A DNA stretch of 64,000 bases. Origin: Mytilus trossulus. Lineage: Eukaryota. Location of the stretch: positions 76,198,001-76,262,000 of the forward strand of contig NC_086380.1 in NCBI RefSeq assembly GCF_036588685.1, in the 5' to 3' direction. Shown here one piece after another: positions 5,355 to 63,690 of the stretch; position 1 is the first letter of the stretch, and each line of letters begins with the position of its first letter. The translations under genes were made by a program, and so were the position numbers. The notes beneath the pieces were generated by a model. It was not told where the DNA came from, did not search any database, and saw nothing but the letters and a program-made list of their open reading frames with translations.

Positions 5355-7004
5355 ATGGCATCAACTAGGTTCTGTGATCCTTGTTCCGAAGCTGACAAGT
5401 CTTCAACAGCAACAAAGTATTGCTCTGACTGTGAAGAAAGACTTTGTACAGACTGTGATGAATCACATTGCAGATTCAAAGCCTTCAAATCTCACCATGT
5501 TATCGACCTGACGTCCATCGGATCCAATAAACTGATGCCTGCGATAAAAAACTGCAATGTCCATTCAGGGATGCTTTTGGATTATTACTGCACAGATCAT
5601 GATATCGTTTGCTGTAGAGCCTGCATATCTAATGAACACAGGATTTGTCAGAACGTACTCCCATTGGAACTGGCCTCGAAGGATGTAAAAAAGTCTGCAC
5701 TGTTTAACGATGTTATGGAAGACATGACGCATCTTATTACAACATTGAATGCTTTGGACAATAACAGACAGTCAAACTTACAATCTATGAAGGAATCTAA
5801 ATCAACAATAACTAAGAAGATCCGAGCAGTGAAATCCAAATTTTTGAAACAAATTGACGATTTGGAGCGTGAATTAACGACCACTTTGTCATCTCTCCAA
5901 CGAAAACATGAAATGGAAATCAACAAACAAAAGCAAGAAATATCGCAAGTCTTGGTCAATGTTATAGAAAATAAAGACGAGATGGATTTTTTGAGAGATC
6001 ATGGATCTAAGAATCAGCTCTTTATATTCCTTCGCCAACAAGTAACAAATATTCATAGCGCCGAGGCCAAGATTCAGCAGATAGTATCCGATTCACAAGA
6101 ATTCAATATAACCTTTGACGAAAAGAAATATGGTAAGCTTGAGTCTTTCGGGTCACTGTCAGAGTATGTCCAACCATGTCAAGTTCAATACAAACCAAAG
6201 AAATTTCAACAAGCCCAGATAAAGGCAGAACCAATGAAAAATATTCTAGGGTTTAAGAAGGATACAGTATTAAAATTTAATACTGATGTGGTAAAAAGTA
6301 TTTTGAGTGTATCAGTGACAGATAATAATAAGCTCCTCATTACTAATACAGCATCATCTGATACCAAACTGTATGTTTACAGAGACTGTAAAGATTATGA
6401 AACAGAGATAGCTTTTTCCTCCGAACCTCATGGTGTTGTTGTGATACCTGGTACGGACAGAGCTGTTATTACCCTACCTAACGAGAATTCTATACAATTC
6501 ATCACTACGACAAAGATGACAAAGGACAACAAAGTTAACGTTGGATTTACATGTTATGGTATCACTGCTGGACATGACAGAATTTACGTTGGTGGTACAG
6601 GTGGTACTATCAAAACATTAGACCCCAATGGGACAGTTCTAAAAACGATTCAACAAGGATCTAATGATATTTTCTTCATAGCATATGATGATATTCATGA
6701 TCATTTGATTGTTAGATGTCATGACAAACTCCTATGTATCAAAGTAGATGGAACACAAGTATACAGCAAGGACGTCTCAGGTTTAGCAGGAGTAACACGC
6801 GATAGGCGTGGTAACATTTACTACGGTTGTTACTATGCCAACAGCATACAGAGAATATCATCAGATGGTGAAAACTGTGAAGAAATGCTGAACAAAGACA
6901 ATGGCATTTACCGTCCGTATGGAATGTGTTTTAATAACGACTTCACGAAACTGTTTGTAATTAATAACGAAGGTAAATCTGTTCGTGTATACAAATGCAA
7001 GTAA
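5355..7004 (+). CDS. RING-less TRIM-like protein (2 B-boxes, coiled coil, NHL-type beta-propeller), paralogue 1, 549 aa
   Basis: Intact ORF. B-box1 CDPC..YCSDC..LC..C..H..H, B-box2 CNVH..YYC..H..CC..C..H, heptad-rich helical region, propeller repeats (PHGVVV, CYGITAG, PYGMCF). True start is ATG 5355 (MAS.., shared by all paralogues), 11 nt after the polypyrimidine-CAG acceptor at 5341-5343. Confidence 0.9.
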   Translation: MASTRFCDPCSEADKSSTATKYCSDCEERLCTDCDESHCRFKAFKSHHVIDLTSIGSNKLMPAIKNCNVHSGMLLDYYCTDHDIVCCRACISNEHRICQNVLPLELASKDVKKSALFNDVMEDMTHLITTLNALDNNRQSNLQSMKESKSTITKKIRAVKSKFLKQIDDLERELTTTLSSLQRKHEMEINKQKQEISQVLVNVIENKDEMDFLRDHGSKNQLFIFLRQQVTNIHSAEAKIQQIVSDSQEFNITFDEKKYGKLESFGSLSEYVQPCQVQYKPKKFQQAQIKAEPMKNILGFKKDTVLKFNTDVVKSILSVSVTDNNKLLITNTASSDTKLYVYRDCKDYETEIAFSSEPHGVVVIPGTDRAVITLPNENSIQFITTTKMTKDNKVNVGFTCYGITAGHDRIYVGGTGGTIKTLDPNGTVLKTIQQGSNDIFFIAYDDIHDHLIVRCHDKLLCIKVDGTQVYSKDVSGLAGVTRDRRGNIYYGCYYANSIQRISSDGENCEEMLNKDNGIYRPYGMCFNNDFTKLFVINNEGKSVRVYKCK

Positions 7005-10735: not shown

Positions 10736-11210
10736 CGTCTTTTATTGTAATTGTATGTAATTGTATGTCAAGCGTGCCATAAAACTATCACTACAAACTG
10801 CGCAGAGTCTGAATTGACCAGTTTTTGTGCTTGACCAGTAAAATCGAGCACACATTTTACTCGACTAGTCTCGACATTGTCTTGACTGGACTTAACTGTA
10901 CTTAAGTGTACTCGACTAGGTCTCGACTTTACTTAATTAGTCTGAAATGGTTTTGACCAAGGCTTGACCTGTCTCGACCTGTCTTGACTATTCTCGACTC
11001 AGTCTGAACCAGTCTCGACTAGTCTTGACTCAGTCTCGACTAGTCTTGACCTTCAAATTTAGTTTTAACTGGTATAAAGAAGCCCATCTAACTAAATTAA
11101 ATATTGATCTTACAAAATTCAAGCTTATTAGGTAGTCTGATTACTGGCTGTGAAATAAAAAAAAAAAAAATTTACAATAGGTAAAAATAAAAATTATTAT
11201 ATAAATTCAG

Positions 11211-12930
11211 ATAGGCATCTTTAAATTTTCTTATTACTTTTTCAAATCAACTTGGATTTTCATCAAACTATGCACCTATCTAAGATATATATCAAGCTTA
11301 CTGAATCCCATTTTATTTACTTTTTTGTTGTATAGCTATGAAATTTAAGAACTAAAGTCATCTCGGTAAAAAAAGCTAGGATTTGCAATTTGGACAAAAT
11401 AGAGATAGGCATCTTTAATTTTTTAATAACTTTTTCAAAATCACTTGGATTTTCATCAAGCTATACAGCTATCTTAGATATATATGAAGCTTACTGAATC
11501 CCATTTCATTTACTTTTTTGTTGTATAGCTGTAAAATTTAAGAATTAAAGTCATCTCGATAAAAAAACCTAGGATTTGCAATTTGGACAAAATAGAGATA
11601 GGCATCTTTAATTTTTTAATAACTTTTTCAAATCAACTTGGATTGTCATCAAACTATGCAGCTATCTTAAATATATATCAAGCTTACTGAATCCCATTTC
11701 ATTTACTTTTTTATTGTATTGCTGTAAAATTTAGGAATTAAAGAAATGTTGGTAAAAAAAGCTAGGATTTGCAATTTCGGACAAAATAGAGATAGTACAC
11801 TTTAAATTTTCTAATAACTTTTTCAAAATCACTTGGATTTTCATCAAACTATGCAGCTATCTTAGATATATATCAAGCTTATTGAATCCCATTTCATTTA
11901 CTTTTTTGTTGTATTGCTGTAAAATTTAAGAATTAAAGTCATCTCGGTAAAAAAAGCTAGGATTTGCAGTTCAGACAAAATAGAGATAGGCATGTTTAAT
12001 TTTTTTAATAACTTTTTCAAATCAACTTGGATTGTCATCAAACTATGCAGCTATCTTAAATATATATCAAGCTTACTGAATCCCATTTCATTTACTTTTT
12101 TATTGTATTGCTGTAAAATTTAGGAATTAAAGAAATGTTGGTAAAAAAAGTTAGGATTTGCAATTTCGGACAAAATAGAGATAGTACACTTTAAATTTTC
12201 TAATAACTTTTTCAAAATCACTTGGATTTTCATCAAACTATGCAGCTATCTCAGATATATATCAAGCTTATTGAATCCCGTTTCATTTACTTTTTTGTTG
12301 TATTGCTGTAAAATTTAAGAATTAAAGTCATCTCGGAAAAAAAATCTAGGATTTGCAGTTCAGACAAAATAGAGATAGGCATCTTTAATTTTTTTAATAA
12401 CTTTTTCAAATCAACTTTGATTGTCATCAAACTATGCAGCTATCTTAGATATATCAAGCTTACTGAATCCTATTTCATTTAATTTTTTATTGTATTGCTG
12501 TAAAATTTAAGAATTAAAGAAATGTTTGTAAAAAAAGCTAGGATTTGCAATTCGGACAAAATAGAGATAGTACACTTTAAATTTTCTAATAACTTTTTCA
12601 AATCAACTTGGATTTTGATCAAACTAGGCAGCTCTCTTAGATATATATCAAGCTTACTGAATCCCAGGTTATTTTGTTTTTTGTTGAATTGCTGTCAAGT
12701 TAAAGAATTTAATTAATCTAGGTCAAGAAAGCTAGAATTTGCAGTTCAACCAAAATAAAGATAGTTCACTTTAATTTTTTTAATATTTTTTTCAAGTCAA
12801 CTTGGATTTTATTCAAACTATATAGCTACCTTGGTGATGTATCAGTTTTACTGAAACATAGGTTGTTATTTAGTTTAGTGTATTTCTGTCAAATTTAAGA
12901 ATTTAATTAGTCTACATGTAGGTTGAAAAG
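11211..12930 (+). repeat. ~194-bp tandem satellite, ~9 units, with a ~388-bp dimer pattern
   Basis: Unit marker atagg/atagt at 11211, 11405, 11598, 11792, 11986, 12181, 12375, 12567 and 12761. Variants agtcatctcgg and agaaatgttgg alternate. Confidence 0.93.
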
Positions 12931-13605: not shown

Positions 13606-14725
13606 TGACCTACATGTAGATTAATTAAATTCTTAAATTTGACAGAAATACACCAAACTAAATAACAACTTATGGTTTAGTAAGATATTTAGCAAGAATA
13701 TTGCAAATATAGTTATAGAGTTTGATGAAAATCTAAGTTTATTTCAAAAAATTAAAGTGTATTTTGTCAAAACTGCAAATCCTAGCTTTTTTACCTATAA
13801 TACGTTGATTCTTAAATTTTACAGCAATACAACCAAAAGCTAAATAACCTGGGTTTCAAGAAGCTTGATATGTATCTAAGATAGCTGCATAGTTTGATCA
13901 AAATCGGTGTTGATTTGAAAAAGTTATTAAAAAATTTAAAGTGTACTATCTCTATTTTGTCTGAATTGCAAATTCTAGCTTTTTTACCAACATTACTTTA
14001 AATCTTAAATTTTACAGCAATACAACAAAAAAGTAAATGAAATGGGATTCAGTAAGCTTGATATACATCTAAGATAGCTGCATAGTTTGATGACCATTCA
14101 AGTTGATTTGAAAAAGATATTAAAAAAAATAAAGATGCCTATCTCTATTTTGTCCAAATTGCAAATCCTAGCTTTTTTTACCGAGATGACTTTAATTCTT
14201 AAATTTTACAGCTATACAAAACAAAAGTAAATGAAATGGGATTCAGTAAGCTTGATATATATCTAAGATAGCTGCATAGTTTGATGACAATCCAAGTTGA
14301 TTTGAAAAAGTTTTAAAAAAAATTAGAGATGCCTATCTCTATTTTGTCTGAATTGCAAATCCTAGCTTGTTTTACCGAGATAACTTTAATTCTTAAATTT
14401 TACAGCAATACAACAAAAAAGTAAATGAAATGGGATTCAGTAAGCTTCATATATATCTAAGATAGCTGCAAAGCTTCATGAAAATCCAAGTGATTTTGAA
14501 AAAGTTATTAAAAAAATTAAAGATGCCTATCTCTAATTTGTCCAAATTTCAAATCCTAGCTTTTTTTACCGAGATGACTTTAATTCTTAAATTTCATAGC
14601 TATACAACAAAAAAGTAAATAAAATGGGATTCAGTAAGCTTGATATATATCTTAGATAGGTGCATAGTTTGATGAAAATCCAAGTTGATTTGAAAAAGTA
14701 ATTAGAAAATTTAAAGATGCCTATC
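13606..14725 (-). repeat. Inverted ~194-bp satellite array (~6 units), right arm of the CACTA element
   Basis: Reverse complement of the 11211-12930 unit (gatgcctatctctattttgtc, aatgggattcagtaagcttg). Confidence 0.9.
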
Positions 14726-15299
14726 TGAATTTATATAATAATTTTTATTTTTACCTATTGTAATTTTTTTTTTTTTATATTTCACAGCCAGTAATCAAAC
14801 TATCTACTAAAGCTTGAATTTGTAAGATCAATATTTAATTTAGTTAGATGGGCTTCTTTATACCAGTCAAAACTAAATTTGAAGGTCAAGACTAGTCGAG
14901 ACAGGTCGAGACTGGTTCAGACTGAGTCGAGACTAGTCGAGACAGGTCAAGACTGGTTCAGACTGAGTCGAGACTAGTCAAGACTGGTCGAGACAGGTCG
15001 AGCCTTGGTCAAGACCATTTCAGACTAATTAAGTAAAGTCGACACCTAGTGGAGTACACTTAAGTACAGTTAAGTCCAGTCGAGACAATGTCGAGGCTAG
15101 TTGAGTAAAATGTGTGCTCGATTTTACTGGTCGAGCACAAAAACTGGTCAATTCAGACTCTGAGCAGTTTGTAGTGTATACCTGTAGTGTCTCCAATGAG
15201 GTTTGAGTATTGAATCGAATTCATGTTTTTGTGGTTAATATACTGTTTTGAAATAAAAATTAAAAAAAAAAAATATCATACCACATTATTCACGATCCG

Positions 15300-16623: not shown

Positions 16624-19337
16624 CCCAGTCAACAGACTAACAGTGGGCCAACGTTGGCAAATGGTCGGCCCGTTGGTCGACCGTTGGTGTTGGCTTCACA
16701 ACATTGGCCCAACGTTGGCAAATTGTCGGTCCGTTGGTCGCAAGTTTATGTTGGCTGCACAACATTGGTCCAACGTTGGCAAATTGTTGGTCCGTTAGTC
16801 GCAAGTTTATGTTGGCTGCACAACATTGGCCCAACGTTGGCAAATTGTCGGTACATTGGTCGCACGTTGGTGTCGGCTGCACAACATTGGCCCAACGTTG
16901 GTCTGTTGTTGTAAATTCATATTATTATCTCATGTTGGTTATAAATAATCGGGCAAATGTTGGCATTATGTTAGTAGCAACATAGGGTCGATATGAAATT
17001 TTGTTAATAGAATTGATTATATAATATTTTACGTTTTATTTCTCTTGGGAGGCGGATAATTTCGATTGCAGCAGGCTTTATGAAAAGTTAATGTTATACC
17101 GAAAGTGTTTATCAACTGAAATTACATTTACAACTCTATGTTGGGCCAATGCTGGCCCAACATTGCGTGATCATATATTATACTCTATATATAAGTCAGG
17201 TAAAATCTATACTAGAATATCATTACTGTAATAAAAAAATGTATATAGTAAACATAGATTGCCTGGTTAAAAATTAAAATTTATTGCAATCATTATTTAT
17301 AATAACTTTATTCATTAAACTTTGTGAAACATAATAATAGCAATTATATGCAGAATGATATTTGATACAGCCAGTCTGTTAATCAAGCCCATTCTGATAA
17401 GGTTGACCATATGTTCGACAAATTTCAAAGATAGTTGCTATGGTAATTAAGTTTATAGGAAATCTGAATGTAATGGGATGGTCACTTTTGTGATTATTTC
17501 CTGTTGTGTATTTGTAAGAAAGCAGTGATACGAAGAAAACAAAAAGAGAATTTCAGGTCATCTGAGATTCAAAGAGAAAGATAGTAACATGTAAGTTGTA
17601 ACTTTAAAAAATCTGATATATATATATACGATTCAGAATGACAAATACAGTATGATTTTTTAATCTGAGGGATGTTGTTAAAAATCAAAACATATATTAA
17701 TTTCTATCATTTTATAATGCTGATCTTGAAGTTTATAAATTTCGGGTGAAATATTTTCTAGATTTTAAATCATTTCAATCCTATTAATTATCATGAAATA
17801 TTTGCCACTGAACATTAGTATCTTCAAACAAATGGTAAATTATATAAATCTATAACCACAACATGTATGATCATTACTGAAGTTAATGGAATAAAATTGT
17901 CTTAAGATGTAACTTATTCCGTAATGTTTCAAAAATGTGGTATAATGATTTCTACTTCATTAAAATATAAATGAATTTGTTAGTTTTATTGTATTTCTAA
18001 ATCGCATGCAAACAGATACGATATATTTGTGAAACCTGATCATATACACACTTGCATGTGTAACAGTGTTTTTATATATCAAATATATAACTGTTCATTA
18101 ATACACATCTTAATTATTCTTTATATATCATGACAAATCCGTCTAATACTAATGAATTTCTGACCATTAGACAAATAACCAATATAAAAAAAAAATGGTC
18201 ATTTAAGATTTTATTTTGTATTAAATAGTGTTTAAACTATTTAGAATATACATTAATTTATATTACATATCTAGAAGGGAGATTACGCACGCATGCATTA
18301 GACAAATGCGCAATTCGAGTTTACTTATAACTTTATTACAGAGTCGGTTAGAAAAAAAAAACATAGCTGTAAAGAGTCTTCGGATAAGGAGATAGATGAT
18401 GCAGCTAAAAATTGGCGGCGCTTAAGCCTTGACAGAGAAGGTGGCAAGAAACAGAGAAGGGAAAAAAGAATAACATATTATATAAATAATAATGACACTG
18501 TTGAAGTTCAAATTGAGGAGGACACTACTCGTGGTGACGACCAATGATATCAAATTTAAAATAAATAAAGTTGCATCTTCTGAATTATTTAATTTTCATT
18601 CTGGATCTGGAACCAATACAACTAAAATTACGTCTCCGAAAAAACTATTTGTATGATCGCCTAACCATAAGCCATACGTCATTTGTTCTGTTAAAGAAAT
18701 AAATGAAATTGATATGAAAAAAGAAGATGTGGTATGATTACTAATGAGACAACTCTTTACAAGACACCAAATGACACAGAGTTTATCTGGTCGATCCATC
18801 AAACATTGCCAAAGAAATATCTTAGCGTCACACAATAGATCAAATTAATGAGGCAAAGTTCATGAAAACAACAAGGACAGTAAAAACAATGGGTAATACA
18901 AAAATACAGAATTGCTACCTTAAACTTTGGCAGTTTGGAATACAAAAAAATATTAAATGCGCTCCGGAGTATTTATCATATACAGCTCCTCATGCAGCAT
19001 CCATTGTAATTTGGTTGAAACAATAGACCAACGTATTGCCAACATAAAAATGAGAAATACCTACCTTGGACCAACATAGTGCCAACCTAAGAAAAGATAT
19101 TTCTACGTTGGTCCAACGTTGTGCCAACATGGATTTCGTTTTTTATACAATGGGCCAACGTTGGCTCTATGTATTGCATATAATCGTACAACGTTGGGCC
19201 AACATGAAGCCATCATGTTGTGCCAACGTAGGCCCACTTTGCACTTATACGTTGGGCCAACGTTAAAATACAACGTTGGGCCAATGCAATGATATACGTT
19301 GTGCCAATGTTGGGCCAACATACTCATGTTGTCTGGG
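16624..19337 (+). mobile_element. EnSpm/CMC-type DNA transposon derivative (CCCAG...CTGGG, TA TSD)
   Basis: TIR cccagtcaaca / tgttgtctggg. TA duplicated at 16622-16623 and 19338-19339. The empty site ggaTAtttttc is present in the duplicate copy near 20823. Palindromic CCAACGTTGG subterminal repeats, including ~4 x 61-bp units at 16645-16900. Confidence 0.88.
18342..18547 (+). other. Putative terminal exon of a transposon accessory gene (DUF4806-like)
   Basis: Acceptor ttattacAG at 18340-18341. Open frame SVRKKKHSCKESSDKEIDDAAKNWRRLSLDREGGKKQRREK..DDQ* followed by AATAAA. The W..L..DR.GG+ motif resembles DUF4806 C-termini (recalled, not searched). Confidence 0.45.
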
Positions 19338-25257: not shown

Positions 25258-25292
<35 letters not shown>

Positions 25293-33916: not shown

Positions 33917-35876
33917 CTGCAACATCCATTCAGAAATGATTTTAGATTATTAGTATACAGACCATGAGATCGTATACCATATATACTGAAGAGCCTGTAT
34001 ATCTAATGAACACAGGGTTAGTCAGAACGTACTTCAATTGGAACTTGCCTGAATGGATGTCAAAATGTCTGCACTGTTTGATGATGTTAGTAAAGACACA
34101 ACAATGCACAAAGCATCTTATTACAACATTGAACGCTTTGAGCGATAACAGACAGAAAAACTTACAATCAATAGAGAAATATAGATTCTTACACTGCAAC
34201 AAGTGTATTGCGATATTTCTCCACTCGAGACAGTTAAATTTTAGTATGTAAAGCGCGAGGCTTACCGGGCCCTTCAAATAATAAGATTTAACTGTCGTGA
34301 GTGGAGAAATATCGTAATACACGAGATATAGTGTCGGAATCTGTTTCTCTAATGCTTTTTATCGTTCTTTTTCAAAGATTTTCAGAAAATTGTGCTCTTT
34401 ATATGCGACGTCATCAGGCAAGGTCGCCTTTTTTCATGTTGTCACAATAGGAAAATTGAAAAGAAAACAAAAAATTTTGACGTCATAATCAAATTTAGAC
34501 TAATCATTTGCCGAGAACAGATTTTTCACTAGTGAGGAGAAATATTTTTCTCACACCGGTCAGAAAAGCTGAAAATAGCACAAAAATTAGAGAATTCTAA
34601 ATCATCAATAACTAACCAGATTCGAGTAAAGCAGTTAAATCCAAATTGTGAAACAAATAGACGAGTTGGAGCGTGAACTTTCTACGAGGTTCTCATTTCT
34701 TCAACGAAAACATAAAAAAATGAATAAACAAACAAAAGCAAGAAATGTCACAGGTCTTGGTCGATGTAATAGAAAATAAAACCGAAATGGATTTCTTACG
34801 AGATTATGGATTAAGGTATCAGATGTTTATATTCTTCGATAAAAAGTAACAAATATTCATAGTACCGAGGCTAAGATTCAGCAGATCGTATCCAAATCAC
34901 AAGAAATCGATATTATCTTTCATGAAAAGAAAAATTTTAAGCTCGAGTTTTTCAGGTCACTGTTAGAAAAATTATTAACCACGTCTGCTTCAATACAGAC
35001 CAAAGAGATTTCAGATAATGACCGAACCAAAGAATCGTATTGTCGAGTTTAAGAAGGATGATACAGAATTAAGAGTTAGAACTGAATCCTATGAAAAAAA
35101 AAGAGGGACGCAAGATACCAAAGGGACAGTCAAACTCATAAATGTAAAACAAACTGACAAAGCCATGGCTAAAAATGAAAAAAGACAAACAGAAAAACAA
35201 TAATACACATGACACAACATAGAAAACTAAAGAATATGTTTACAAAAAATGCAAAGATTATGAGATAAAGATACCATTTTCCCCTATTCTTTAAGGTGTA
35301 GCCGTGATACCTGATATCAATAGAGCTGTTGTTACTCTATCTGAATATCAGTCCATACAGTTTATAAACACTACAACGATGAAAAAAGACAAGAAAGTTA
35401 ACGTAGGATTTACATGTTATGGTATTACTGCTGGACGCGAGAGAGTGTACGTGGGTGGTGAAGGTGAAATTATCAGAACATTAGACATCAATGGGAAAAT
35501 TCTTAAAATACATTTGTAATTCAACAAGGATTTAATTGTATTTTCTTCATTGCATATGATGATATACATGATCAATTAATTGTTAGATGTCTTGACAAAC
35601 TCCTTTGGATAAAATTAAATGGAACACTTGTATACAGTAAGGACGCGTCAGGATCAGCAGGAGTAACAATTGATCGACAAGGGAACATTTATTGCGGTAG
35701 TTCCACGACCAACAACATACAGAAACTATCATCAGATAGAGAAATAAAAGGAAGAAATTCTTAACAAAGACAATGACATTAGACATCCGTCTGGAATGTG
35801 TTTTAATAATGACTTCACCAAACTGTTTGTCATTAATAACGTTTACGAGTCCGTATATGTATTCAAATGCAAGTAC
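33917..35876 (+). pseudogene. TRIM-like pseudogene (paralogue 3), 5'-truncated, with stops, frameshifts and two insertions
   Basis: Homology runs from B-box2 (ctgcaacatccattcagaaatgattttagattattag) to the FKCKY end. Fragments such as HLITTLNAL and KVNVGFTCYGITAGRERVYVGG remain. Insertions at ~34181-34595 and ~35093-35234. B-box1 is absent. Confidence 0.88.
34181..34595. mobile_element. ~415-bp insertion in pseudogene 3
   Basis: Interrupts caatcaatagagaa..tctaaatcatcaata. tagagaa is repeated on both sides (34172-34178 and 34588-34594) as a possible TSD. Family unknown. Confidence 0.7.
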
Positions 35877-36350
35877 AAGAGGGACGAAAGATACCAGAGG
35901 GACAGTCAAACTCATAAATCGAAAATAAACTGACAACGCCACGGCTAAAATGAAAAGGACAAACAGATATACAATAGTACACATGACACAACATAGAAAA
36001 CTAAAGAATAAACAACACGAACGCCACCAACAACTATGGGTGATCTCATGTGCTCCGGGAGGGTAAGTAGATCCTGTTCCATGTGTGGCACACGTCATGT
36101 TGTTGATGAGATAACAAATCCGGTAAATAGTCTAATTCGGTAGGTCACATTCATGAAAGGGAAGGGGATTGTAGTTACGACGTAAGGTACATATCCGATA
36201 TCATTTGGGAAATGGTTATTCCATAACGGTCAACTAATTCGTGATGGAGTCCGTAAAATTCACGAAGAGATGATTTCAACATCACCATTTGGAACTCTTG
36301 ATTGTATAGCTTCCTTGTGAGCAACAACCCTCTATTAAGAAAATCAGGAT
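35877..36350 (-). mobile_element. Penelope-like 3' end inserted at the stop of pseudogene 3
   Basis: Begins aagagggacgaaagataccagagggacagtcaaactc. The same end occurs at ~21002 and ~35093. It is the reverse complement of the 29455-29900 family. Confidence 0.78.
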
Positions 36351-41979: not shown

Positions 41980-43638
41980 ATGGCAACAGCTAGTTTCTGT
42001 GATCCTTGCTCTGAAGCTGACAAGTCTTTAACAGCAACAAAATATTGCTCCGACTGTGAAGAAAAACTTTGTACAGACTGTGCTGATTCACATTGCAGAT
42101 TCAAAGCATTCAAATTTCATCATGTTATCGATCTGTCGGCTTTCGGATCAAATAAATTCATTTTTGCGAAGAAAAACTGCAATGTCTATTCAGAAATGAT
42201 ATTGGATTATTACTGCACAGATCATGAGATCGTATGCTGTAGAACCTGCATATCTAATGAGCACAGGCTTTGTCAGAACGTTCTCCCATTGGAACTTGCC
42301 TCGAAAGATGTTAAAAAGTCTGCACTGTTTAACAATGTTATGAAAGACATGACGCATCTTATTACAACATTGAGTGCTTTAGATAATAACAGACAGTCAA
42401 ACTTACAATCAATGGAAGAATCTAAATCAGCAATAAACAAGCAGATCCGAGCAGTGAAATCCAAATTGCTGAAACAAATTGATGAGTTGGAGCGTGAACT
42501 TACAACCAGTTTCTCGTCTCTCCAACGAAAACATGAAATGGAAATCAACCAACAAAAGCAAGAAATATCACACGTCTTGATCGATGTAGAGGAAAAGAAA
42601 AATAAAATGGATTTTTTAAGAGATCATGGATCAAAGAATCAGCTTTTTGTATTCTTGCGACAACAATTAACACATATTAATAGCACCGAAGCTAAGATTC
42701 AACAGATGGTATCCAATTCACAAGAATTCGATATTATCTTTGATGAAAAGAAAGATGGCATGCTTGAATCTCTTGGGTCCCTGATAGAGTATGTCCAACC
42801 TTGTCTAGTTCAATACAAACCACAGAAATGTCAACACCCCCAAATAAAGGCAGAACCGATGAAATACATTATTGGGTTTGAGAAGGATACAGGATTAAAA
42901 CTTGAAATTGGCGAAACATATGCTCTTCGAGATGTAACAGTCACAAACGATAATAAGCTACTTATCACTAATACATCATCATTCGATCCCAAACTCTATG
43001 TTTACAGAGACTGTGAAGATTATGAGACAGAGATAAGATTTTCCTCCGAACCTCATGGTGTTGCTGTGATACCTGGTACGGACAAAGCTGTTATTACCTT
43101 ACCTAACAAGAAGTCTATACAATTCATAAATACTAAAGATATGACAAAGAGCAACACAGTTAAAGTTGGATTTACATGTGTTGGTATCACTGCTGGACGT
43201 GACAGAATTTATGTTGGTGGTGTACATGGTGTAGGCGGTATTATTAAAATATTAGACACCAACGGGTCAATTTTGAAAACAATTAAACAAGAATCTGATT
43301 TTATTTGTTTCATAGGATACGATGGTAGAAAGGAAAAATTGATTGTTAGGTGTCTTGACAAACTCCTTTGTATTAAATTAGATGGAACACTATTATACAG
43401 TAAGGTCATTTCAGGAATATCAGGTATAACACTTGATCGACAGGGCAAGCTCTATTTCTGCGATTACCATGGCAGCAACATTCAAAGAATATCATCAGGT
43501 GGGAAATGCAGTGAAAAAATGCTGAACAAAGACAATAGTATTAACAAAACGTATGGAATGAGTGTTAACAATGACTTCACAAAACTGTTTGTTATGCATA
43601 ATCATTATAAGTGTGTATATAAATGCAAGTACTTGTAA
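41980..43638 (+). CDS. RING-less TRIM-like paralogue 4 (most divergent intact copy), 552 aa
   Basis: Intact ORF with the same architecture. Acceptor AG at 41968-41969, 10 nt before the ATG. B-box2 has CNVY in place of CNVH. 3-aa loop insertion (GGVHGVGG). Confidence 0.88.
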   Translation: MATASFCDPCSEADKSLTATKYCSDCEEKLCTDCADSHCRFKAFKFHHVIDLSAFGSNKFIFAKKNCNVYSEMILDYYCTDHEIVCCRTCISNEHRLCQNVLPLELASKDVKKSALFNNVMKDMTHLITTLSALDNNRQSNLQSMEESKSAINKQIRAVKSKLLKQIDELERELTTSFSSLQRKHEMEINQQKQEISHVLIDVEEKKNKMDFLRDHGSKNQLFVFLRQQLTHINSTEAKIQQMVSNSQEFDIIFDEKKDGMLESLGSLIEYVQPCLVQYKPQKCQHPQIKAEPMKYIIGFEKDTGLKLEIGETYALRDVTVTNDNKLLITNTSSFDPKLYVYRDCEDYETEIRFSSEPHGVAVIPGTDKAVITLPNKKSIQFINTKDMTKSNTVKVGFTCVGITAGRDRIYVGGVHGVGGIIKILDTNGSILKTIKQESDFICFIGYDGRKEKLIVRCLDKLLCIKLDGTLLYSKVISGISGITLDRQGKLYFCDYHGSNIQRISSGGKCSEKMLNKDNSINKTYGMSVNNDFTKLFVMHNHYKCVYKCKYL

Positions 43639-53250: not shown

Positions 53251-53674
53251 TTGTGAATGATCATTATATCGAGCCAATTTAAGTAACTATAAGGTATTTA
53301 TATATTTCTTTCTGGTCGCATTAGAGTATACTCGACGTGTCAACAAGACGACACGTTTATAGAACGGTATTCACTATGAATGGTTTACCGCCGGTAGTTT
53401 TAAGTCATTAACCATTCCAATCTTATAACAAAACGCCGTTCTGCTATTAGTTAACGGATGGTTGTTTTTTTCTTTATTTTAAAAGGCAATTGAATGTTCA
53501 ATTCTAGAAGGGTGAACATCCTATGTACAAATTTGCATGCATAAATTGATAAATTGTTTCTGCTAAAACTACTCTATAAAATTGAATTAAGAAAATTAAG
53601 GAAAACCTTTTGATTAGAAACGTAAAGAACACGTTTCATTTTTATTTACTATTTTTTTTTCCAGAAATCATTCT

Positions 53675-55330
53675 ATGGCATCAAGTAGTTTCTGTGATCC
53701 TTGTTCCGAAGCTGACAAGTCTTTAACAGCAACAAGGTATTGCTCAGACTGTGAAGAAAGACTTTGTACAGACTGTGCAGAGTCACATTGCAGATTCAAA
53801 GCTTTTAAATTTCACCATGTTATCGACCTGTCGTCCATTGGATCCAATATTCTTATGCCCGCGAAGAAACACTGCAATGTCCATTCAGAAATGATATTGG
53901 ATTATTACTGCACAGACCATGAGATCGTATGCTGTAGAGCCTGCATATCTAATGAACACAGGGTTTGTCGGAATGTACTCCCATTGGAACTGGCCTCGAA
54001 GGATGTAAAAAAGTCTGCACTATTTAACGATGTTACGGAAGACATAACGCATCTTATCACAACATTGAGTGCTTTAGACAATAACAGAGAGTCAAACTTA
54101 CAATCACTAGAGAAATCAAAATCAACAATAACTAAGAAGATCCGAGCAGTGAAATCAAAATTTTTGAAACAAATTGAAGATTTGGAGCGTGAATTAACGA
54201 CCACTTTTTCATCTCTCCAACGAAAACATGAAATCGAAATCAACAAACAAAAGCAAGAAATATCGCAAGTCTTGGTCAATGTTATAGAAAATAAAAACGA
54301 GATGGATTTTTTGAGAGATCATGGATCTAAGAATCAGCTCTTTTTATTCCTTCGCCAACAAGTAACAAATATTCATAGCGCTGAGGCCAAGATTCAGCAG
54401 ATAGTATCCGATTCACAAGAATTCGATATTACCTTTGACGAAAAGAAAGATGTTAAGCTTGAGTCTTTCGGGTCACTGTTAGAGTATGTCCAACCATGTC
54501 AAGTTCAATACAAACCAAAGAAACTTCAACAAGCCCAGATAAAGGCGGAACCAATGAAAAATATTCTAGGGTTTGAGAAGGATACATTATTAAAACTTAA
54601 TACTGATGTGGTAGAACTTTTTGTTAGTGTATCAGTGACAGATGATAATAAGCTCCTCATTACTAATACAGCATCATCCGATACCAAACTCTATGTTTAC
54701 AGAGACTGTAAAGATTATGAGACAGAGATAACATTATCCTCCGCACCTCATTGTGTTGCTGTGATACCTGGTACCAACAGAGCTGTTATTACCCTACATA
54801 ACGAACAGTCTATACAATTTATAAATACGACAACGATGACAAAGGACAACAAAGTTAAAGTCGGATTTACATGCTATGGTATCACTGCTGGACATGACAG
54901 AATTTTTGTTGGTGGTGATTATGGTACTATCAAAACATTAGACACCAATGGGGCAATTCTAAAAGCAACCACACATGGATCTAAATGTATTTACTTCATA
55001 GCATACGATGATTTACAAGATCAGTTGATTGTTAGATGTTGTAACAAGCTTCTTTGTGTCAAAGGAGATGGAACACTGGTGTACAGTAAGGACGTTTCGG
55101 GACAAGCAGGTTTAACACTTGATCGACGGAGGAACCTTTATTTTGGTGGTTTTTCAACTCACAACATACAAAGAATGTCAACAGACGGGGAAAATTGTGA
55201 AGAAATGCTGAACAAAGACAATGACATTAACCGTCCGTATGGAATGTGTTTTAACAATGACTTCACAAAATTATTTGTTATTAATAACCGTTGCACGTCC
55301 GTATGTGTATATAAATGCAAGTACTTGTAA
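53675..55330 (+). CDS. RING-less TRIM-like paralogue 5, 551 aa
   Basis: Intact ORF with all Cys/His ligands present. Acceptor (t)n-ccAG at 53663-53664, 10 nt before the ATG. Confidence 0.9.
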   Translation: MASSSFCDPCSEADKSLTATRYCSDCEERLCTDCAESHCRFKAFKFHHVIDLSSIGSNILMPAKKHCNVHSEMILDYYCTDHEIVCCRACISNEHRVCRNVLPLELASKDVKKSALFNDVTEDITHLITTLSALDNNRESNLQSLEKSKSTITKKIRAVKSKFLKQIEDLERELTTTFSSLQRKHEIEINKQKQEISQVLVNVIENKNEMDFLRDHGSKNQLFLFLRQQVTNIHSAEAKIQQIVSDSQEFDITFDEKKDVKLESFGSLLEYVQPCQVQYKPKKLQQAQIKAEPMKNILGFEKDTLLKLNTDVVELFVSVSVTDDNKLLITNTASSDTKLYVYRDCKDYETEITLSSAPHCVAVIPGTNRAVITLHNEQSIQFINTTTMTKDNKVKVGFTCYGITAGHDRIFVGGDYGTIKTLDTNGAILKATTHGSKCIYFIAYDDLQDQLIVRCCNKLLCVKGDGTLVYSKDVSGQAGLTLDRRRNLYFGGFSTHNIQRMSTDGENCEEMLNKDNDINRPYGMCFNNDFTKLFVINNRCTSVCVYKCKYL

Positions 55331-57400: not shown

Positions 57401-58605
57401 AGGAGTAGGTACCGATTTTGGCCTCAAATTTCAAGTTCATCTGACGAAAGATTTTGACTACTTTTTAAACACTCAAGTATCTACTTCATTTGAATAAATT
57501 AGGATATGTAAAAGATTTTTGCTGATTTAGTCATTAAAAACGATCCGATTCATGCTCAAATATGACAAATCTACCAAATGTGCCGAAAAATGTAACTTTT
57601 CAGATCGTTTTTGTTCAAAATGAAAGTGGCCGCATCCGGGTTCATCCTCAACCTTTATATATGTTATGTATTATCATCAAATACAACTGATTTCATATCG
57701 GTTAAGAATAAGCTTATCTTATTGGATAAAAAGAGGCCACATTACATTCTTTATTCTTCAGTAATAAGTTCCATCGGACATTAACAGAACACCGGTCGTT
57801 AACAGACTTTTAAATGATAATGACCGGTGGGGCGTAGTTTGTCTGTTTGAGAGACGATCCGTAATAAAACGCAACGCGATTTAGACGTGTTTTCACTTTA
57901 CAGTTAGGAAAATGGAAGACGCGTCTACTAGTGTAGACAACTTTAATGACCGTTTTACTATTGATGAAATTAAAGTAAACTTCATTTTGTATTTTAAATA
58001 TTGAAGTGTATTATACTGATATCTAAAACTATGACCAGTTTTCACTCTTTCCTAAAGAATTTGAACATTATCTCACGGTAATTTTTAACAATTTGAATGT
58101 ATGAATTCTTTTTAAAACATACATGTAGTTTCTCAATGAAATAAACATAATAGTTATTGATAAACCTGTCATTATCGTGATATATGGACAGCCCTTAGGA
58201 CGGTTGTATTGACCGCGACAGCGATAATGACCTCACCTTTGGCTCAGTCATTATCGTTGTCTCAGTCAATACCACGGTCCTGTGGGTAGTCTATATATCA
58301 CGATATTGACCAGTTTTTCAATAACTATTATTTAATTACTTTTCAATAAAAAGGATGAACACGAATGCGGCCACTTTAGTTTTACACGAAACCGTCTAAA
58401 ATTTAATTAAAATGCGGGAATTGTGAAGATTTCAGTACTCTGGCATGACTTAATGGTGTTAATACCCGATATATGTGCATTGTCCTATCAAAAATAACCC
58501 ATATTTATGTAGCAGAAGCATTCTACTGTCCAATAAATAACTAAAAGTTTACATTTTAACAATTTTGTAAAGCTGCTAAAAAGGGGGCTTACTGGACCTA
58601 CTCCT
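57401..58605. mobile_element. TTAA-targeting (Kolobok-like) MITE with a nested ~640-bp insertion (~57700-58340)
   Basis: TTAA|AGGAGTAGG...CCTACTCCT|TAAA. Empty site at ~30535-30550. An uninterrupted relative lies at 61355-61856. Confidence 0.8.
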
Positions 58606-59775
58606 TAAAACTGTTCACTAGACTTTTAACGCTAATTTTTGAATTTTGGGGTTTACAACTTTCTTTGTCAATAAATCTATACAGATCTGAATCGCTAAAT
58701 ACTTTAATATCTCGCCAATTCTATTAAACTCTTTTGTTTTATGAATCAAAATTCCTGTTCTTATTATATCCTATAATTTGGTGTATTGAAAAGTTTCCTA
58801 CTGTATTAATAACATGCGAATATATAAAACAGATGCATGTAACCTGCGATCTTTCATTTATTTGATTTGGTTTTTATCTGTGTGTTGTCGGTAGAAATCT
58901 ACCTAGGACGTATTATATCACATGTTATACTAATACGTCATACATAGAATTTCTTACATAAGGGAGGAATAACATATGATTTTCAAAAACTTTCATAGCA
59001 AAAATTCGAATTTTGTTTGTTTTCCTTAACTGTAACCCTGATCTAAAAAAAAACACGGTAAAGTTTGTAAGTTACTTTTGTTGTTCTGTTTTTATGACGA
59101 TGTAATTTATGTTAACCTTGTTTCAGTAGAATTAAATTTATTTTCAAAAGCATTTTCTTAAGTCTACCAGAGAGGATAATTAATTATTCTCCTACAATTA
59201 GACAGGTATCTATGTTCTGTTATGCATCGGTCTGAGTCTGCAACAATTGTTTATGAATAAGTGGATAGTATCAAATGACTCATTACAACATATATATAGA
59301 AAAAAACTTAAAAAGAACAAAGAAAATAAAGAAAAGAAAAGATGACATACAATAAAAACACTTATAATTGACTGAAAATGCAGTGTACGTGGTTTATTCA
59401 TTTCGTTTTAAAAAATCAAAACAGGGTACGTTTATGCACACTGTTTCGTATCATTTCGTATGGTATCGTTAAATTTTTGTATTCTAAATTTTTTGAATGA
59501 ACGTTAACATGGTTGTTATATATAAGTGGATAGGTCGATTGTTTTTTTTTTTTTCAAATTTGGCTATTTTGTTGTGTGTCTGTCTTTGACTTTCCTCTTT
59601 ATTTACTACTTGTCCATCTTTTCGTATAAATGATAAATGAGAAAAAATATCTTAAAGTGAATATAAAGTCTACATCTTTAAATAAATTTACATTATTGTT
59701 TTTTTTTTGCATTATACATATTATAAGACATCTGTATGTGTCAATATTTCCGTAAATGATAATCGAAAAAACAAA

Positions 59776-60247
59776 TATATGTACTGTAGCTGGCATGATT
59801 ATCTATTGTATATATACTGTAGCTGGCATGATAATCTATTGCATATATACTGTAGCTGGCATGATTATCTTTTGTATATATACTGTAGCTGGCATGATTA
59901 TCTATTGTATATATACTGTAGCTGGCATGATTATCTATTATATATATACTGTAGCTGGCATGATTATCTATTGTATATATACTGTAGCTGGCATGATTAT
60001 CTTCTATTGTATATATACTGTAGCTGGCATGATTATCTATTGTATATATACTGTAGCTGGCATGATTATCTATTGTATATATACTGTAGCTGGCATGATT
60101 ATCTATTGTATATATACTGTAGCTGGCATGATTATCTATTGTATATATACTGTAGCTGGCATGATTACATGTATCTATTGTATATATACTGTAGCTGGCA
60201 TGATTATCTATTGTATCTATACTGTAGCTGGCATGATTATCTTCTAT
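59776..60247. repeat. 33-bp minisatellite, 14 copies
   Basis: Unit tatatatactgtagctggcatgattatctattg repeated with no spacers. Confidence 0.95.
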
Positions 60248-60430
60248 TTTACCTTTATCAAACAAAGGGCAAGTGTAGTTATTTATACGAATTTTTTGGT
60301 TTTATGCATTGATTTGGCCTTCCAATTATTTTTGATTCCCGCGTAATTGAGAGACTTATGTAGACGACAAATGCGATACACGAGTCTGGTTTATACAAGT
60401 ATAAGCCTACCATGTTTGATTAGATGTTAA

Positions 60431-61013: not shown

Positions 61014-61049
61014 CTGATGAGCCTTGTGTAGCTGAAACGTGCATCTGAC
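61014..61049 (+). ncRNA. Degenerate hammerhead ribozyme copy
   Basis: CTGATGA-gccttgtgtagct-GAAAC-gtgc-ATC. Core boxes are kept but stems I-III are mismatched, so it is probably inactive. Confidence 0.45.
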
Positions 61050-62137: not shown

Positions 62138-63690
62138 ATGGCATCAGCTAGTTTCTGTGATCCTTGCTCTGAAGCTAATAAGTCATTAACAGCAACAAAA
62201 TATTGCTCCGACTGTGAAGAAAGACTTTGTACAGACTGTGCAGAATCACATTGCAGACTAAAAGCTTTTAAATCTCACCATGTTATCGACCTGTCGTCCA
62301 TTGGATCCAATATTCTTATGTCCGCGAAGAAACACTGCAATGTCCATTCAGAAATGATATTGGATTATTACTGCACAGACCATGAGATCGTATGCTGTAG
62401 AGCCTCCATATCTAATGAACACAGGGTTTGTCAGAACGTACTCCCATTGGAACTGGCCTCGAAGGATGTAAAAAAGTCTGCACTGTTTCACGATGTTATG
62501 GAAGATATGACGCATCTTATTACAACATTGAATGCTTTAGACAATAACAGAGAGTCAAACTTACAATCTATGGAGAAAACTAAATCAACAATAACTAAGA
62601 AGATCCGAGCAGTGAAATCCAAATTTTTGAAACAAATTGACGATTTGGAGCGTGAATTAACGACCACTTTGTCATATCTTCAACGAAAACATGAAATCGA
62701 AATCAACAAACAAAAGCAAGAAATATCGCAAGTCTTGGTCAATGTTATAGAAAATAAAAACGAGATGGATTTTTTGAGAGATCATGGATCTAAGAATCAG
62801 CTCTTTATATTCCTTCGCCAACAAGTAACAAATATTCATAGCGCTGAGGTCAAGATTCAGCAGATAGTATCTGATTCACAAGAATTCGATATAACCTTTG
62901 GTAAGCTTGAGTCTCTCGGGTCACTGTCAGAGTATGTTCAACAATGTCAAGTTCAATACAAACCAAAGAAATTTCAACAAGCCCAGATAAAGGCGGAACC
63001 AATGAAAAACATTCAAGGGTTTGAGAAGGAAACAGTATTAAAATTTAATACTGATGTGGTAAAAAGTCTTTTGAGTGTATCAGTGATAGATAATAATAAG
63101 CTGCTCATTACTAATGCAGCATCCTCCGATCCCATACTCTATGTTTACAGAGACTGTAAAGATTATGAGACAGAGATAGCTTTTTCCTCCGCACCTCATT
63201 GGGTTGATGTGATACCTGGTACCAATAGAGCTGTTATTACTCTACCTTACGAAAAGTCTATATAATTTATAAATACGACAACGATGACAAAGGTCAACAA
63301 AGTTAAAGTCGAATTTACATGTTATGGTATCACTGCTGGACATGACAGGGTTTACGTTGGTGGTCAAGATGGTACTATCAAAACATTAGACACAAATGGG
63401 ACAATTCTAACAACGATTCAACAAGGATATGGAAATATTTTCTTCATGGTATACAATGAGGTACAGCAGGTTTAACACTTGATCGACAGAAAAACATTTA
63501 TTTTTGCGGTTTTGAGACCAACAACATACAAAGAATGTCATCAGATGGAGAAAATAGTGAAGAAATGCTGAACAAAGACAATGACATTGACCGTCCATTG
63601 GGAATGTGTTTTAACGAAGACTTCACAAAACTGGTTGTTATCAATGAAAGTGGCAAGTCCGTATATGTATACAAGTGCAAGTACATGTGA
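62138..63690 (+). pseudogene. TRIM-like pseudogene (paralogue 6)
   Basis: ATG 62138 follows acceptor AG 62126-62127. CAA>TAA nonsense at 63263-63265, 15-bp in-frame deletion (DEKKD lost), B-box2 Cys>Ser (CCRAS), ~88-bp frameshifting deletion near 63465. Homology ends at YKCKYM* (TGA 63688-63690). Confidence 0.88.

What the first reader, a model, noticed from the sequence alone, without database searches (positions are those of the whole stretch)
5355..63690. Array of RING-less TRIM-NHL genes with a constant scaffold and a hypervariable propeller: a candidate diversifying intracellular sensor system
Seen: by hand count, paralogues 1 and 2 differ at 10 of 294 aa in the B-box/coiled-coil half but at 51 of 228 aa in the propeller. 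Changes cluster in the same short stretches in every copy: KSILS/KNLFS/YALRD/ELFVS/KSLLS; EPHG/APHC/APHW; PNENS/PIAKS/PNKKS/HNEQS/PYEKS; GGTGG/GGDYG/GGVHGVGG/GGQDG/GGEGE; SNDIFF/FDNILF/SDFICF/SKCIYF/YGNIFF; GCYYAN/GGFNTN/CDYHGS/GGFSTH/CGFETN; NEGKS/NRCTS/ESGKS. Strand cores stay fixed. Known: NHL propellers (Brat, TRIM71/LIN-41) bind ligands with top-face loops, and TRIM coiled coils dimerise. Inference: a receptor repertoire under diversifying selection, analogous to TRIM5 PRY-SPRY variable loops but built on NHL. Lacking a RING, the proteins may heterodimerise through their near-identical coiled coils.
Basis: partly seen in the sequence, partly recalled or inferred. Interest (0 to 1): 0.85.

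Follow-up and report, generated by a model that had tools for sequence, protein, structure and literature searches.

The report
Mussel RING-less B-box/NHL gene array
A mussel chromosome carries a megabase-long tandem array of Brat-like (RING-less B-box, coiled-coil, NHL-propeller) genes; the loops on one face of the propeller evolve under diversifying selection while the copies keep exchanging segments, which fits a variable intracellular binding repertoire whose ligand and expression are still unknown.

Summary
The window (Mytilus, best matches M. trossulus) holds six head-to-tail copies of a single-coding-exon gene. Three are intact, one is truncated and two are pseudogenes. They belong to a ~1.1-Mb array of at least 52 copies, and a second scaffold carries at least 12 more. 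The protein has two B-boxes, a TRIM-type coiled coil and a six-bladed NHL-like propeller, with no RING.

For that pair, synonymous divergence is 0.058 in the front half and 0.268 in the propeller. The two halves, and even pairs of blades, reject each other's trees.

Diversifying selection is nevertheless supported:
- A site-class test gives 2ΔlnL 172, against 33 or less in recombination-aware null simulations.
- Sites chosen in one set of paralogues show dN/dS 2.4-2.8 in a disjoint set, and their dS is not raised.
- 16 of 19 selected sites lie in or next to the alternate loops that share one propeller face.
- An independent clade at about 44% identity is hypervariable at the same positions.

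I rate it a new variant of a known kind.

The parts
5355..7004 (+). Copy 1: intact 549-aa B-box1/B-box2/coiled-coil/NHL-like propeller gene (single coding exon)
   Evidence: ORF; tblastn 83% identity to copy 4; Pfam B-boxes; same as locus L014
22149..23744 (+). Copy 2: 531-aa ORF. A 70-bp deletion relative to copy 4 (its 55245-55314) shifts the frame and removes most of blade 6, so it is probably non-functional
33918..35876 (+). Decayed relic of a more divergent family member, in three frames, 38-71% identity piecewise
   Evidence: tblastn pieces in frames 1-3; blastn 77-78%
41980..43638 (+). Copy 3: intact 552-aa gene, the most divergent intact copy in the window (73% aa identity to copy 4)
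53675..55330 (+). Copy 4: intact 551-aa gene and the reference for the model. B-box1 53690-53821, B-box2 53864-53962, coiled coil 54017-54412, six-blade propeller 54563-55324
   Evidence: ORF; Pfam; AF2 model with pLDDT 85; Foldseek; PDB profile search
62138..63693 (+). Copy 5: pseudogene with a premature TAA at 63263-63265, an 87-bp deletion at about 63465 and a change of frame
53654..53674 (+). Conserved polypyrimidine/CAG splice acceptor 10-11 nt before the ATG. The same element precedes every copy (for example 5333-5354). The spacing to the ATG varies by 1 nt between copies, so this stretch is untranslated
   Evidence: alignment A2; homology between copies begins here
58700..59157 (+). Array-specific conserved block 3.0 kb upstream of copy 5. 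Counterparts lie at 436-912 (copy 1), 45417-45884 (copy 4) and 30656-30900 (relic). It contains a CCAAT motif, has no ORF and ends in a GTAAGT donor-like site. It is a candidate promoter plus non-coding exon 1 (inferred)

Best explanation
Shown:
- The window is a 64-kb slice of a head-to-tail array of about 1.1 Mb on a Mytilus chromosome.
- Each gene has one coding exon, preceded by a 5'-UTR intron. It encodes a cytosolic protein with the Brat architecture: B-box1, B-box2, a TRIM-type coiled coil and a six-bladed NHL-like propeller, with no RING.
- The array evolves by birth and death, with intact copies beside truncated and decayed ones.
- The copies exchange sequence frequently, by gene conversion or unequal crossing-over. 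This keeps the coding exon recognisable while the flanks have diverged, homogenises the B-box/coiled-coil half most strongly, and reassorts blades among copies.
- About 20-25 codons are under diversifying selection. Almost all lie in the alternate loops that share one face of the propeller, and nearly every paralogue carries its own combination of residues there.

Inferred:
- By the NHL repeat register, these are the D-A and B-C loops, which form the ligand-binding 'top' face.
- The proteins form a repertoire of intracellular binders whose targets change quickly. Pathogen or mobile-element products are the most likely targets.
- They probably act as coiled-coil dimers and by sequestration or recruitment rather than by their own E3 ligase activity, since they have no RING.
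- The mixed, slightly acidic loop face favours protein or other non-RNA ligands over a Brat-like RNA surface.
For: Architecture:
- Pfam finds two B-boxes and no RING.
- A family profile matches TRIM28 B-box1/B-box2/coiled coil at E 1.8e-17, and matches NHL repeats in Pizza/PknD (2e-11), Thin (1.6e-5) and TRIM3 (3.8e-5).
- The AF2 model has pLDDT 85 and 24 propeller strands.
- The best Foldseek matches are TRIM71, TRIM2, Brat, Thin and Mei-P26 NHL domains, with target-normalised TM-score 0.70-0.75.

Array:
- The genome holds at least 82 matches, nearly all copies of the C8 array are on the + strand, and 29 of 30 fetched loci have intact ORFs.

Exchange between copies:
- dS is 0.16 in the front half and 0.29 in the propeller.
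- The AU test rejects the other half's tree (ΔlnL 601 and 813) and the other blade pairs' trees (ΔlnL 139-424).
- In most pairs the homology stops at the acceptor and at the stop codon.

Selection:
- The omega>1 class gives 2ΔlnL 172 with a fixed synonymous rate and 75 with a free one. The front half gives about 5.
- Segment-specific trees give 47-102.
- Null simulations with recombination and a large neutral class give 0.9-32.8.
- Cross-validated omega is 2.2 by ML and 2.4-2.75 by Nei-Gojobori. The joint alpha/beta LRT gives p 0.002 and 2e-9, and dS is not raised at these sites.

One face:
- With structural classes fixed in advance, dN/dS is 1.01 in the one-face loops, 0.32 in the other-face loops and 0.37 in strands, with equal dS.
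- 12 of 63 one-face loop residues are selected, against 7 of 186 elsewhere (p 3e-4). Four of those seven sit within three residues of a one-face loop.

Independent replication:
- A clade at 44% identity is hypervariable at the same sites (entropy 1.99 against 0.55, p 5e-7).

Repertoire:
- 26 distinct site signatures occur in 30 copies.

Context:
- TRIM2/3/45/71-like transcripts track disease tolerance in oysters (PMC9892467).
- A B-box orthogroup is expanded in bivalves (PMC8382680).
Against:
- The one-face loop class as a whole has dN/dS of only 1.0, so the positive-selection claim rests on site models. Recombination inflates these models: null 2ΔlnL reached 33.
- The two cross-validation sets are not fully independent if tracts are copied between them.
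- The assignment to the 'top' face rests on strand order and the NHL motif register, not on coordinates, which the tool does not return.
- Three of the six window copies are broken.
- Pfam's NHL model stays below its threshold (best E 0.012).
Confidence: 0.6

Rival explanations
1. There is no adaptive diversification. The propeller loops are simply unconstrained (neutral), and the front half looks constant only because gene conversion homogenises it.
For: dS is 1.8-fold lower in the front half over all pairs and 4.6-fold lower for copies 1 and 2. Tree conflict is strong. The one-face loop class has dN/dS 1.01, which is the neutral value. Recombination alone produces false signals of 2ΔlnL up to 33 and up to 23 'selected' sites in simulations.
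Against: The observed 2ΔlnL of 172 is five times the largest null value. Sites chosen in one paralogue set have dN/dS 2.4-2.75 in the other set, significantly above 1 even with a free synonymous rate. The signal persists with separate trees for each blade pair.
Confidence: 0.12
2. The proteins are Brat/LIN-41-like post-transcriptional regulators. They bind RNA on the propeller's top face, and they diversify in conflict with transposon or viral RNAs, or to partition endogenous mRNA targets, rather than sensing proteins.
For: The architecture is the same as Brat: two B-boxes, coiled coil and NHL, with no RING. The best structural matches are RNA-bound NHL domains of TRIM71 and Brat. In the known NHL-RNA complexes the RNA sits on the top face (PMC9634614).
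Against: The loop face carries a net charge of about -2 (range -4 to +1), not the strongly positive surface described for TRIM71 (PMC9634614). The selected positions take acidic, aromatic and aliphatic residues alike. Sequence identity to the RNA-binding NHL domains is only 12-15%.
Confidence: 0.15
3. The array is mostly genomic debris: a recently amplified, decaying segmental duplication whose ORFs are not expressed or not functional.
For: Three of the six window copies are truncated or broken. Many fragments with stops occur elsewhere in the array. No expression evidence could be obtained.
Against: 29 of 30 fetched full-length loci keep intact 548-565-aa ORFs. Purifying selection acts on strands (0.37), other-face loops (0.32) and the front half (0.28). 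All zinc ligands are invariant across 63 family members. The family keeps the same length and architecture in other Mytilus species and in a clade at 44% identity.
Confidence: 0.05

Closest known systems
Drosophila Brat (Brain tumor) and the TRIM-NHL class (TRIM2, TRIM3, TRIM32/Thin, TRIM71/LIN-41, Mei-P26)
   Same: Both have B-box1, B-box2, an antiparallel-type coiled coil and a six-bladed NHL propeller. Like Brat, this family has no RING. The NHL domains of these proteins are the best structural matches, and blade 5 matches NHL repeats by profile. In these proteins ligands bind the top face around the central groove (PMC9634614).
   Different: The known members are single-copy, slowly evolving developmental regulators. 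Here there are at least 65 tandem copies with diversifying loops. There is no filamin domain, unlike TRIM2, TRIM3 and TRIM71. Identity is 12-15%. The loop face is not electropositive. Pfam's NHL model is not reached.
Fish finTRIM / bloodthirsty-like / TRIM35-like multigene sets and primate TRIM5alpha
   Same: Both are TRIM-type scaffolds amplified into large, partly tandem families, with positive selection concentrated in the surface loops of the C-terminal binding domain (PMC3137616). The same logic applies: a constant oligomerising scaffold carrying a variable recognition module.
   Different: Their recognition module is B30.2 (PRY-SPRY), not an NHL propeller. They carry a RING and can act as E3 ligases. 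They are vertebrate families.
Bivalve 'TRIM-like' or B-box expansions (orthogroup OG708 in PMC8382680; TRIM2/3/45/71-like transcripts in oysters, PMC9892467; mollusc B-box+NHL clusters in the ESM Atlas)
   Same: This is the same broad family. NCBI names the M. trossulus members 'TRIM71-like', 'TRIM45-like' or 'uncharacterized'. Many mollusc clusters carry B-box and NHL without RING.
   Different: In the papers I could search, these were reported as counts or as differentially expressed transcripts. I found no description of a megabase array, of one-face loop selection or of blade reassortment.

Membership tests
TRIM / RBCC family | N-terminal RING finger | tested here: not met
   There is no RING Pfam hit in any of five copies at E up to 0.1, and B-box1 starts at residue 6. 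A splice acceptor lies 10-11 nt before the ATG with spacing that is not a multiple of 3 and varies between copies. The conserved upstream block has no ORF. NCBI models of relatives are 548-550 aa and start at the same Met.
TRIM / RBCC family | One or two B-box zinc fingers | tested here: met
   PF22586 (B-box1-like) covers residues 6-49 and PF00643 covers 64-96. All Cys/His ligands are invariant in 63 sequences. The profile aligns to TRIM28 B-box1 and B-box2.
TRIM / RBCC family | Coiled coil following the B-boxes | tested here: met
   AF2 predicts helices at 115-162, 168-216 and 219-246. The profile alignment to the TRIM28 RBCC covers query 8-255 at E 1.8e-17. Dimerisation itself was not tested.
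TRIM-NHL (class VII) / Brat-like | C-terminal six-bladed NHL beta-propeller | tested here: met
   The model has 24 strands in 6x4 order at 297-550. The top Foldseek hits are all TRIM-NHL domains (E 6e-14 to 5e-12, target-normalised TM-score 0.70-0.75). Blade 5 matches NHL repeats by profile. Caveat: Pfam NHL is below its cut-off (E 0.012 in one copy), and other six- and seven-bladed propellers score only slightly worse.
TRIM-NHL (class VII) / Brat-like | Filamin/ABP280 domain between coiled coil and NHL (present in TRIM2, TRIM3 and TRIM71, absent in Brat and TRIM32) | tested here: not met
   There is no Filamin Pfam hit. The model shows only a two-strand hairpin at 248-274 and a disordered linker at 284-293.
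TRIM-NHL (class VII) / Brat-like | Electropositive top face that binds RNA | tested here: inconclusive
   Residues of the one-face loops have a net charge of -1.9 (range -4 to +1) in 30 paralogues. This is a residue count, not a surface calculation, and no binding data exist.
Diversified antiviral-type TRIM multigene families (finTRIM/btr/TRIM5-like) | Tandem multigene family with positive selection in loops of the C-terminal recognition domain | tested here: met
   Array. Selection. Loop location.
Diversified antiviral-type TRIM multigene families (finTRIM/btr/TRIM5-like) | B30.2 (PRY-SPRY) recognition domain | tested here: not met
   There is no SPRY/PRY hit, and the C-terminal domain is a propeller.
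Diversified antiviral-type TRIM multigene families (finTRIM/btr/TRIM5-like) | Induction by infection or interferon-like signals, or restriction activity | not testable with these tools

The most novel reading that the evidence does not exclude
Mussels have built a recombining intracellular recognition repertoire on an NHL propeller instead of B30.2 or LRR. The top-face loops diversify under positive selection. Whole blades are reassorted among at least 65 tandem genes by gene conversion. A homogenised RING-less coiled-coil scaffold lets paralogues pair as heterodimers, which would multiply specificities combinatorially against viruses, transmissible cancer cells or mobile elements.
Probability: 0.25. 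Interest if true: 0.85.

Novelty: new variant of a known kind. Interest (0 to 1): 0.62.

Why it matters
Bivalves have no adaptive immunity but resist disease well, and their genomes hold many expanded and largely unexplained 'TRIM-like' genes. This array gives a concrete, testable case. The recognition surface can be named residue by residue, as about 20 codons on one propeller face. The mode of diversification is visible, as point changes under selection plus reassortment of blades. The scaffold is kept uniform by exchange between copies.

It would be the first NHL-based counterpart of the B30.2-based TRIM5/finTRIM systems that I could find. That would show the same evolutionary solution reached with a different binding fold and without a RING.

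It also carries a methodological warning. A 'constant domain against variable domain' contrast between paralogues can be largely an artefact of gene conversion, so it has to be checked against dS.

Tried and rejected
- IQ-TREE codon models were too slow and timed out. I replaced them with my own GY94-F3x4 pruning code on nucleotide ML trees.
- The reading 'constant scaffold = stronger purifying selection only' is rejected. dS differs 1.8- to 4.6-fold and the trees conflict.
- The reading 'whole propeller under positive selection' is rejected. Domain omega is 0.54, and strands and other-face loops are at 0.32-0.37.
- A RING exon upstream is rejected. The acceptor-to-ATG spacing varies by 1 nt, and the conserved upstream block has no ORF.
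- A retrocopy origin is unlikely. Homology ends at an intron acceptor, and the copies keep the intron.
I made no further attempt, and read laying was not used.
- Ten literature searches found no paper on this array or on NHL loop selection in molluscs. The library misses most subscription journals, so this is weak evidence of novelty.
- Mapping onto 3-D coordinates was not possible, because structure prediction returns secondary structure only. I assigned faces from the alternation of loops in a 24-strand propeller and from the NHL motif register.
- The window has no N runs, and nothing in it was taken for human sequence.
Full report
WHAT IS THERE

The window is AT-rich (GC 0.28-0.35) and has no N runs. 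It contains five long + strand ORFs of one family. tblastn with the best copy finds six family members:
- copy 1, 5355-7004, 549 aa;
- copy 2, 22149-23744, 531 aa;
- a frameshifted relic, 33918-35876;
- copy 3, 41980-43638, 552 aa;
- copy 4, 53675-55330, 551 aa;
- copy 5, 62138-63693.

Copy 2 lacks 70 bp relative to copy 4. That shifts the frame and removes most of the last blade. Copy 5 has a premature TAA at 63263-63265, an 87-bp deletion and a frame change. So three of the six copies are intact.

The closest database proteins are Mytilus trossulus models named 'uncharacterized' or 'TRIM71-like/TRIM45-like' (81-90% identity). More distant members occur in M. edulis, M. californianus, M. galloprovincialis and M. 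coruscus.

In the window's own genome the family forms a head-to-tail array on contig C8 from about 75.33 to 76.46 Mb. It has at least 52 copies, all but one on the + strand. At least 12 more copies lie on scaffold C65, and older relatives lie at C8:72.3-72.4 Mb and elsewhere. Of 30 fetched loci, 29 have intact ORFs of 548-565 aa.

GENE AND PROTEIN ANATOMY

A conserved polypyrimidine/CAG acceptor lies 10 or 11 nt before every ATG. Because this spacing differs between copies, the stretch cannot be coding.

An array-specific block of about 450 bp lies 3-8 kb upstream of copies 1, 4 and 5 and of the relic. It carries a CCAAT motif, has no ORF and ends in a GTAAGT donor-like site. I take it as a candidate promoter plus non-coding first exon. 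This is inferred, because no RNA data were available.

Domain evidence:
- Pfam finds a B-box1-type finger (residues 6-49) and a B-box2 (64-96), and no RING.
- A 63-sequence family alignment has every zinc ligand invariant.
- As a profile, this alignment matches the TRIM28 B-box1/B-box2/coiled-coil structure at E 1.8e-17. Through blade 5 it also matches NHL repeats of Pizza/PknD (2e-11), Thin (1.6e-5), TRIM3, TRIM2 and TRIM71.
- AlphaFold2 (pLDDT 85) predicts three long helices (115-246), a hairpin, a disordered linker and 24 strands at 297-550, which is six four-stranded blades.
- The best Foldseek matches in the PDB are all TRIM-NHL propellers: TRIM71, TRIM2, Brat, Thin, Mei-P26 and TRIM3, with target-normalised TM-score 0.70-0.75 at 12-15% identity.

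The architecture is therefore that of Drosophila Brat: B-box1, B-box2, coiled coil and NHL, with no RING and no filamin domain. The ESM Atlas lists many mollusc clusters with B-box plus NHL and no RING, so the gene family as such is known, though it is barely characterised.

CHECKING THE OBSERVATION

WHY THE CONTRAST IS PARTLY MISLEADING

Nei-Gojobori estimates show that synonymous divergence also differs between the halves. For copies 1 and 2, dS is 0.058 in the front half and 0.268 in the propeller. The medians over 435 pairs are 0.16 and 0.29, with omega 0.28 and 0.49. Along the gene, pS is about 0.2 in the B-boxes, about 0.1 in the coiled coil and 0.2-0.4 in the propeller.

The two halves give conflicting trees, and each strongly rejects the other's tree (ΔlnL 601 and 813, AU p below 1e-7). 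The three blade pairs of the propeller also reject each other's trees (ΔlnL 139-424).

In most locus pairs the detectable homology starts about 28 bp before the ATG and ends about 2 bp after the stop codon. Subsets of loci share the 5' flank, yet their homology still breaks at the stop codon.

I read this as old duplicates whose coding exon is kept similar by repeated gene conversion or unequal exchange. The exchange is strongest in the scaffold half, and blades are reassorted among copies. In an independent clade at 44% identity, the front half is no more constant than the propeller (mean entropy 0.64 against 0.65).

IS THERE DIVERSIFYING SELECTION?

IQ-TREE codon models timed out, so I wrote a GY94-F3x4 likelihood on ML nucleotide trees. 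Global omega is 0.32 for the front half and 0.54 for the propeller.

A non-parametric mixture over omega needs a class above 1 in the propeller. This class holds about 12% of codons at omega 2-5. The test gives 2ΔlnL 172, or 75 when the synonymous rate also varies by site. The front half gives about 5. Nineteen propeller codons have posterior above 0.9.

Recombination inflates such tests, so I added four controls:
(a) Separate trees for each blade pair still give 2ΔlnL of 47-102.
(b) I ran fourteen simulations with three different segment trees, a neutral class of 34-49% and no omega above 1, and analysed each on one inferred tree. They give 2ΔlnL of 0.9-32.8. This confirms the inflation, but it stays far below 172.
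(c) In cross-validation, codons chosen in one set of paralogues have ML omega 2.2 and Nei-Gojobori dN/dS 2.4-2.75 in the disjoint set. dS at those codons is not raised (0.12-0.21 against 0.18-0.25 elsewhere). The joint alpha/beta LRT gives p 0.002 and 2e-9.
(d) With structural classes fixed in advance from the model, dN/dS is 1.01 in the loops of one face, 0.32 in the loops of the other face and 0.37 in strands, at equal dS of 0.26-0.31.

I conclude that a subset of loop codons is under diversifying selection. The loop class as a whole averages out to neutral, and the rest of the protein is under purifying selection.

WHERE THE SITES ARE

In a propeller of 24 consecutive antiparallel strands the loops alternate between the two faces. 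Twelve of the 19 sites lie in the loops that follow odd-numbered strands, out of 63 residues in those loops. Seven lie among the other 186 propeller residues (Fisher p 3e-4). Four of those seven are the second or third residue of the strand that follows such a loop.

Each of the twelve loops of that face carries at least one candidate site; in one of them (396-399) the only candidate, site 399, is weak (FEL-like p 0.04, posterior 0.60).

The NHL-like motif strand (small residues, P-x-G...D) is strand 2 of each group of four. If it is the innermost strand A, as in NHL domains, where the N-terminal strand completes blade 6 (PMC9634614), then these loops are the D-A and B-C loops. Those loops form the 'top' face that binds ligands in Brat, LIN-41 and TRIM2/3/71. 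The one-face statement follows from topology. The label 'top' is inferred, because the tool returns no coordinates.

In 36 proteins of a distant clade (about 44% identity, from metagenome-derived contigs, organism unknown) the same positions are the hypervariable ones. Entropy is 1.99 at the 19 sites against 0.55 elsewhere (p 5e-7), and 1.32 in the one-face loops against 0.33 in the other-face loops.

Thirty paralogues carry 26 different combinations at these sites. The residues include acidic, basic, aromatic and aliphatic types, and the loop face has a net charge of about -2. That does not resemble the strongly basic RNA-binding face of TRIM71 (PMC9634614).

MECHANISM

Shown: a birth-and-death tandem array, exchange between copies, purifying selection on the fold and scaffold, and diversifying selection on one propeller face.

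Inferred: the array encodes a cytosolic repertoire of binding modules on a TRIM-type dimerising scaffold. There is no signal peptide-like N-terminus, since B-box1 starts at residue 6. Without a RING, the proteins would act by binding, sequestering or recruiting partners rather than as E3 ligases. The near-identical coiled coils make heterodimers plausible, but this is untested.

A pathogen or mobile-element target is the most economical reading of recurrent selection on a binding face. It also fits reports that TRIM2/3/45/71-like transcripts track disease tolerance in oysters (PMC9892467) and that a B-box orthogroup is expanded in bivalves (PMC8382680). No data here show expression or induction.

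COMPARISON AND NOVELTY

Functionally, the closest analogues are the fish ftr/btr/hltr families and primate TRIM5alpha. In these, B30.2 loops are under positive selection on a constant RBCC scaffold (PMC3137616). Here the variable module is an NHL propeller and the RING is missing.

By membership, this is a RING-less, filamin-less TRIM-NHL-like (Brat-type) family. It does not meet the RING criterion of TRIM proper.

Ten literature searches found no description of this array, of NHL loop selection or of blade reassortment in molluscs. The library is incomplete, so I rate the finding as a new variant of a known kind.

LIMITS

- The site model is my own implementation with fixed branch lengths and grid optimisation.
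- Only 30 of at least 65 copies were analysed.
- The cross-validation sets may share converted tracts.
- Nothing in the window was taken for human sequence.

Noticed in passing
window 11209-12832 and 13760-14726: Two satellite arrays with a 194-bp unit (8.4 and 5 copies, 87-92% matches). The consensus units look like reverse complements of each other, and the arrays flank about 930 bp. This may be the two arms of a foldback or Helitron-like element.
   Followed up: no
window 48108-49284 and 50982-52162: A large inverted repeat with 1.2-kb arms at 85% identity and smaller nested inverted repeats between them. It lies between the conserved upstream block and copy 4, and it roughly doubles that copy's putative 5' intron (8.2 kb against 3-5 kb in other copies).
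   Followed up: partly
window 58336-58607: A dispersed repeat of about 280 bp (86-88% identity) present on many chromosomes, with 2672 first-look candidates in the genome. It is SINE- or MITE-like and is inserted next to the array-specific upstream block.
   Followed up: partly
window 59776-60242: A 33-bp tandem repeat (14 copies, 93% matches). The 170-200-aa 'ORFs' on both strands at 59707-60346 are artefacts of this repeat.
   Followed up: no
window 16639-16901: A 61-bp tandem repeat with 4.3 copies.
   Followed up: no
L012, L013, L015 (G000:C8:75623930-75625582 on the minus strand; 75640928 and 75612058 on the plus strand): Three copies are 99.5-99.7% identical over 2.6-4.6 kb including flanks, and one of them is inverted. 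This is a very recent segmental triplication with an inversion inside the array.
   Followed up: partly
G000:C65:1.38-2.15 Mb: A second array of at least 12 copies lies on a 4.2-Mb scaffold. None of the four intact copies analysed from it is near-identical to a C8 copy among the 30 analysed, so it could be either a highly divergent alternative haplotype or a separate paralogous array.
   Followed up: no
Proteins P0050-P0086: About 36 family members at 41-45% identity come from ENA/JGI metagenome contigs of up to 476 kb. They presumably derive from host DNA of another mytilid in symbiont or environmental metagenomes. Some source annotations are misleading, for example 'DNA-binding FrmR family transcriptional regulator'.
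   Followed up: partly
window 35583-36098 (minus strand): A 171-aa ATG ORF on the opposite strand overlaps the 3' end of the decayed family relic. It was not examined.
   Followed up: no
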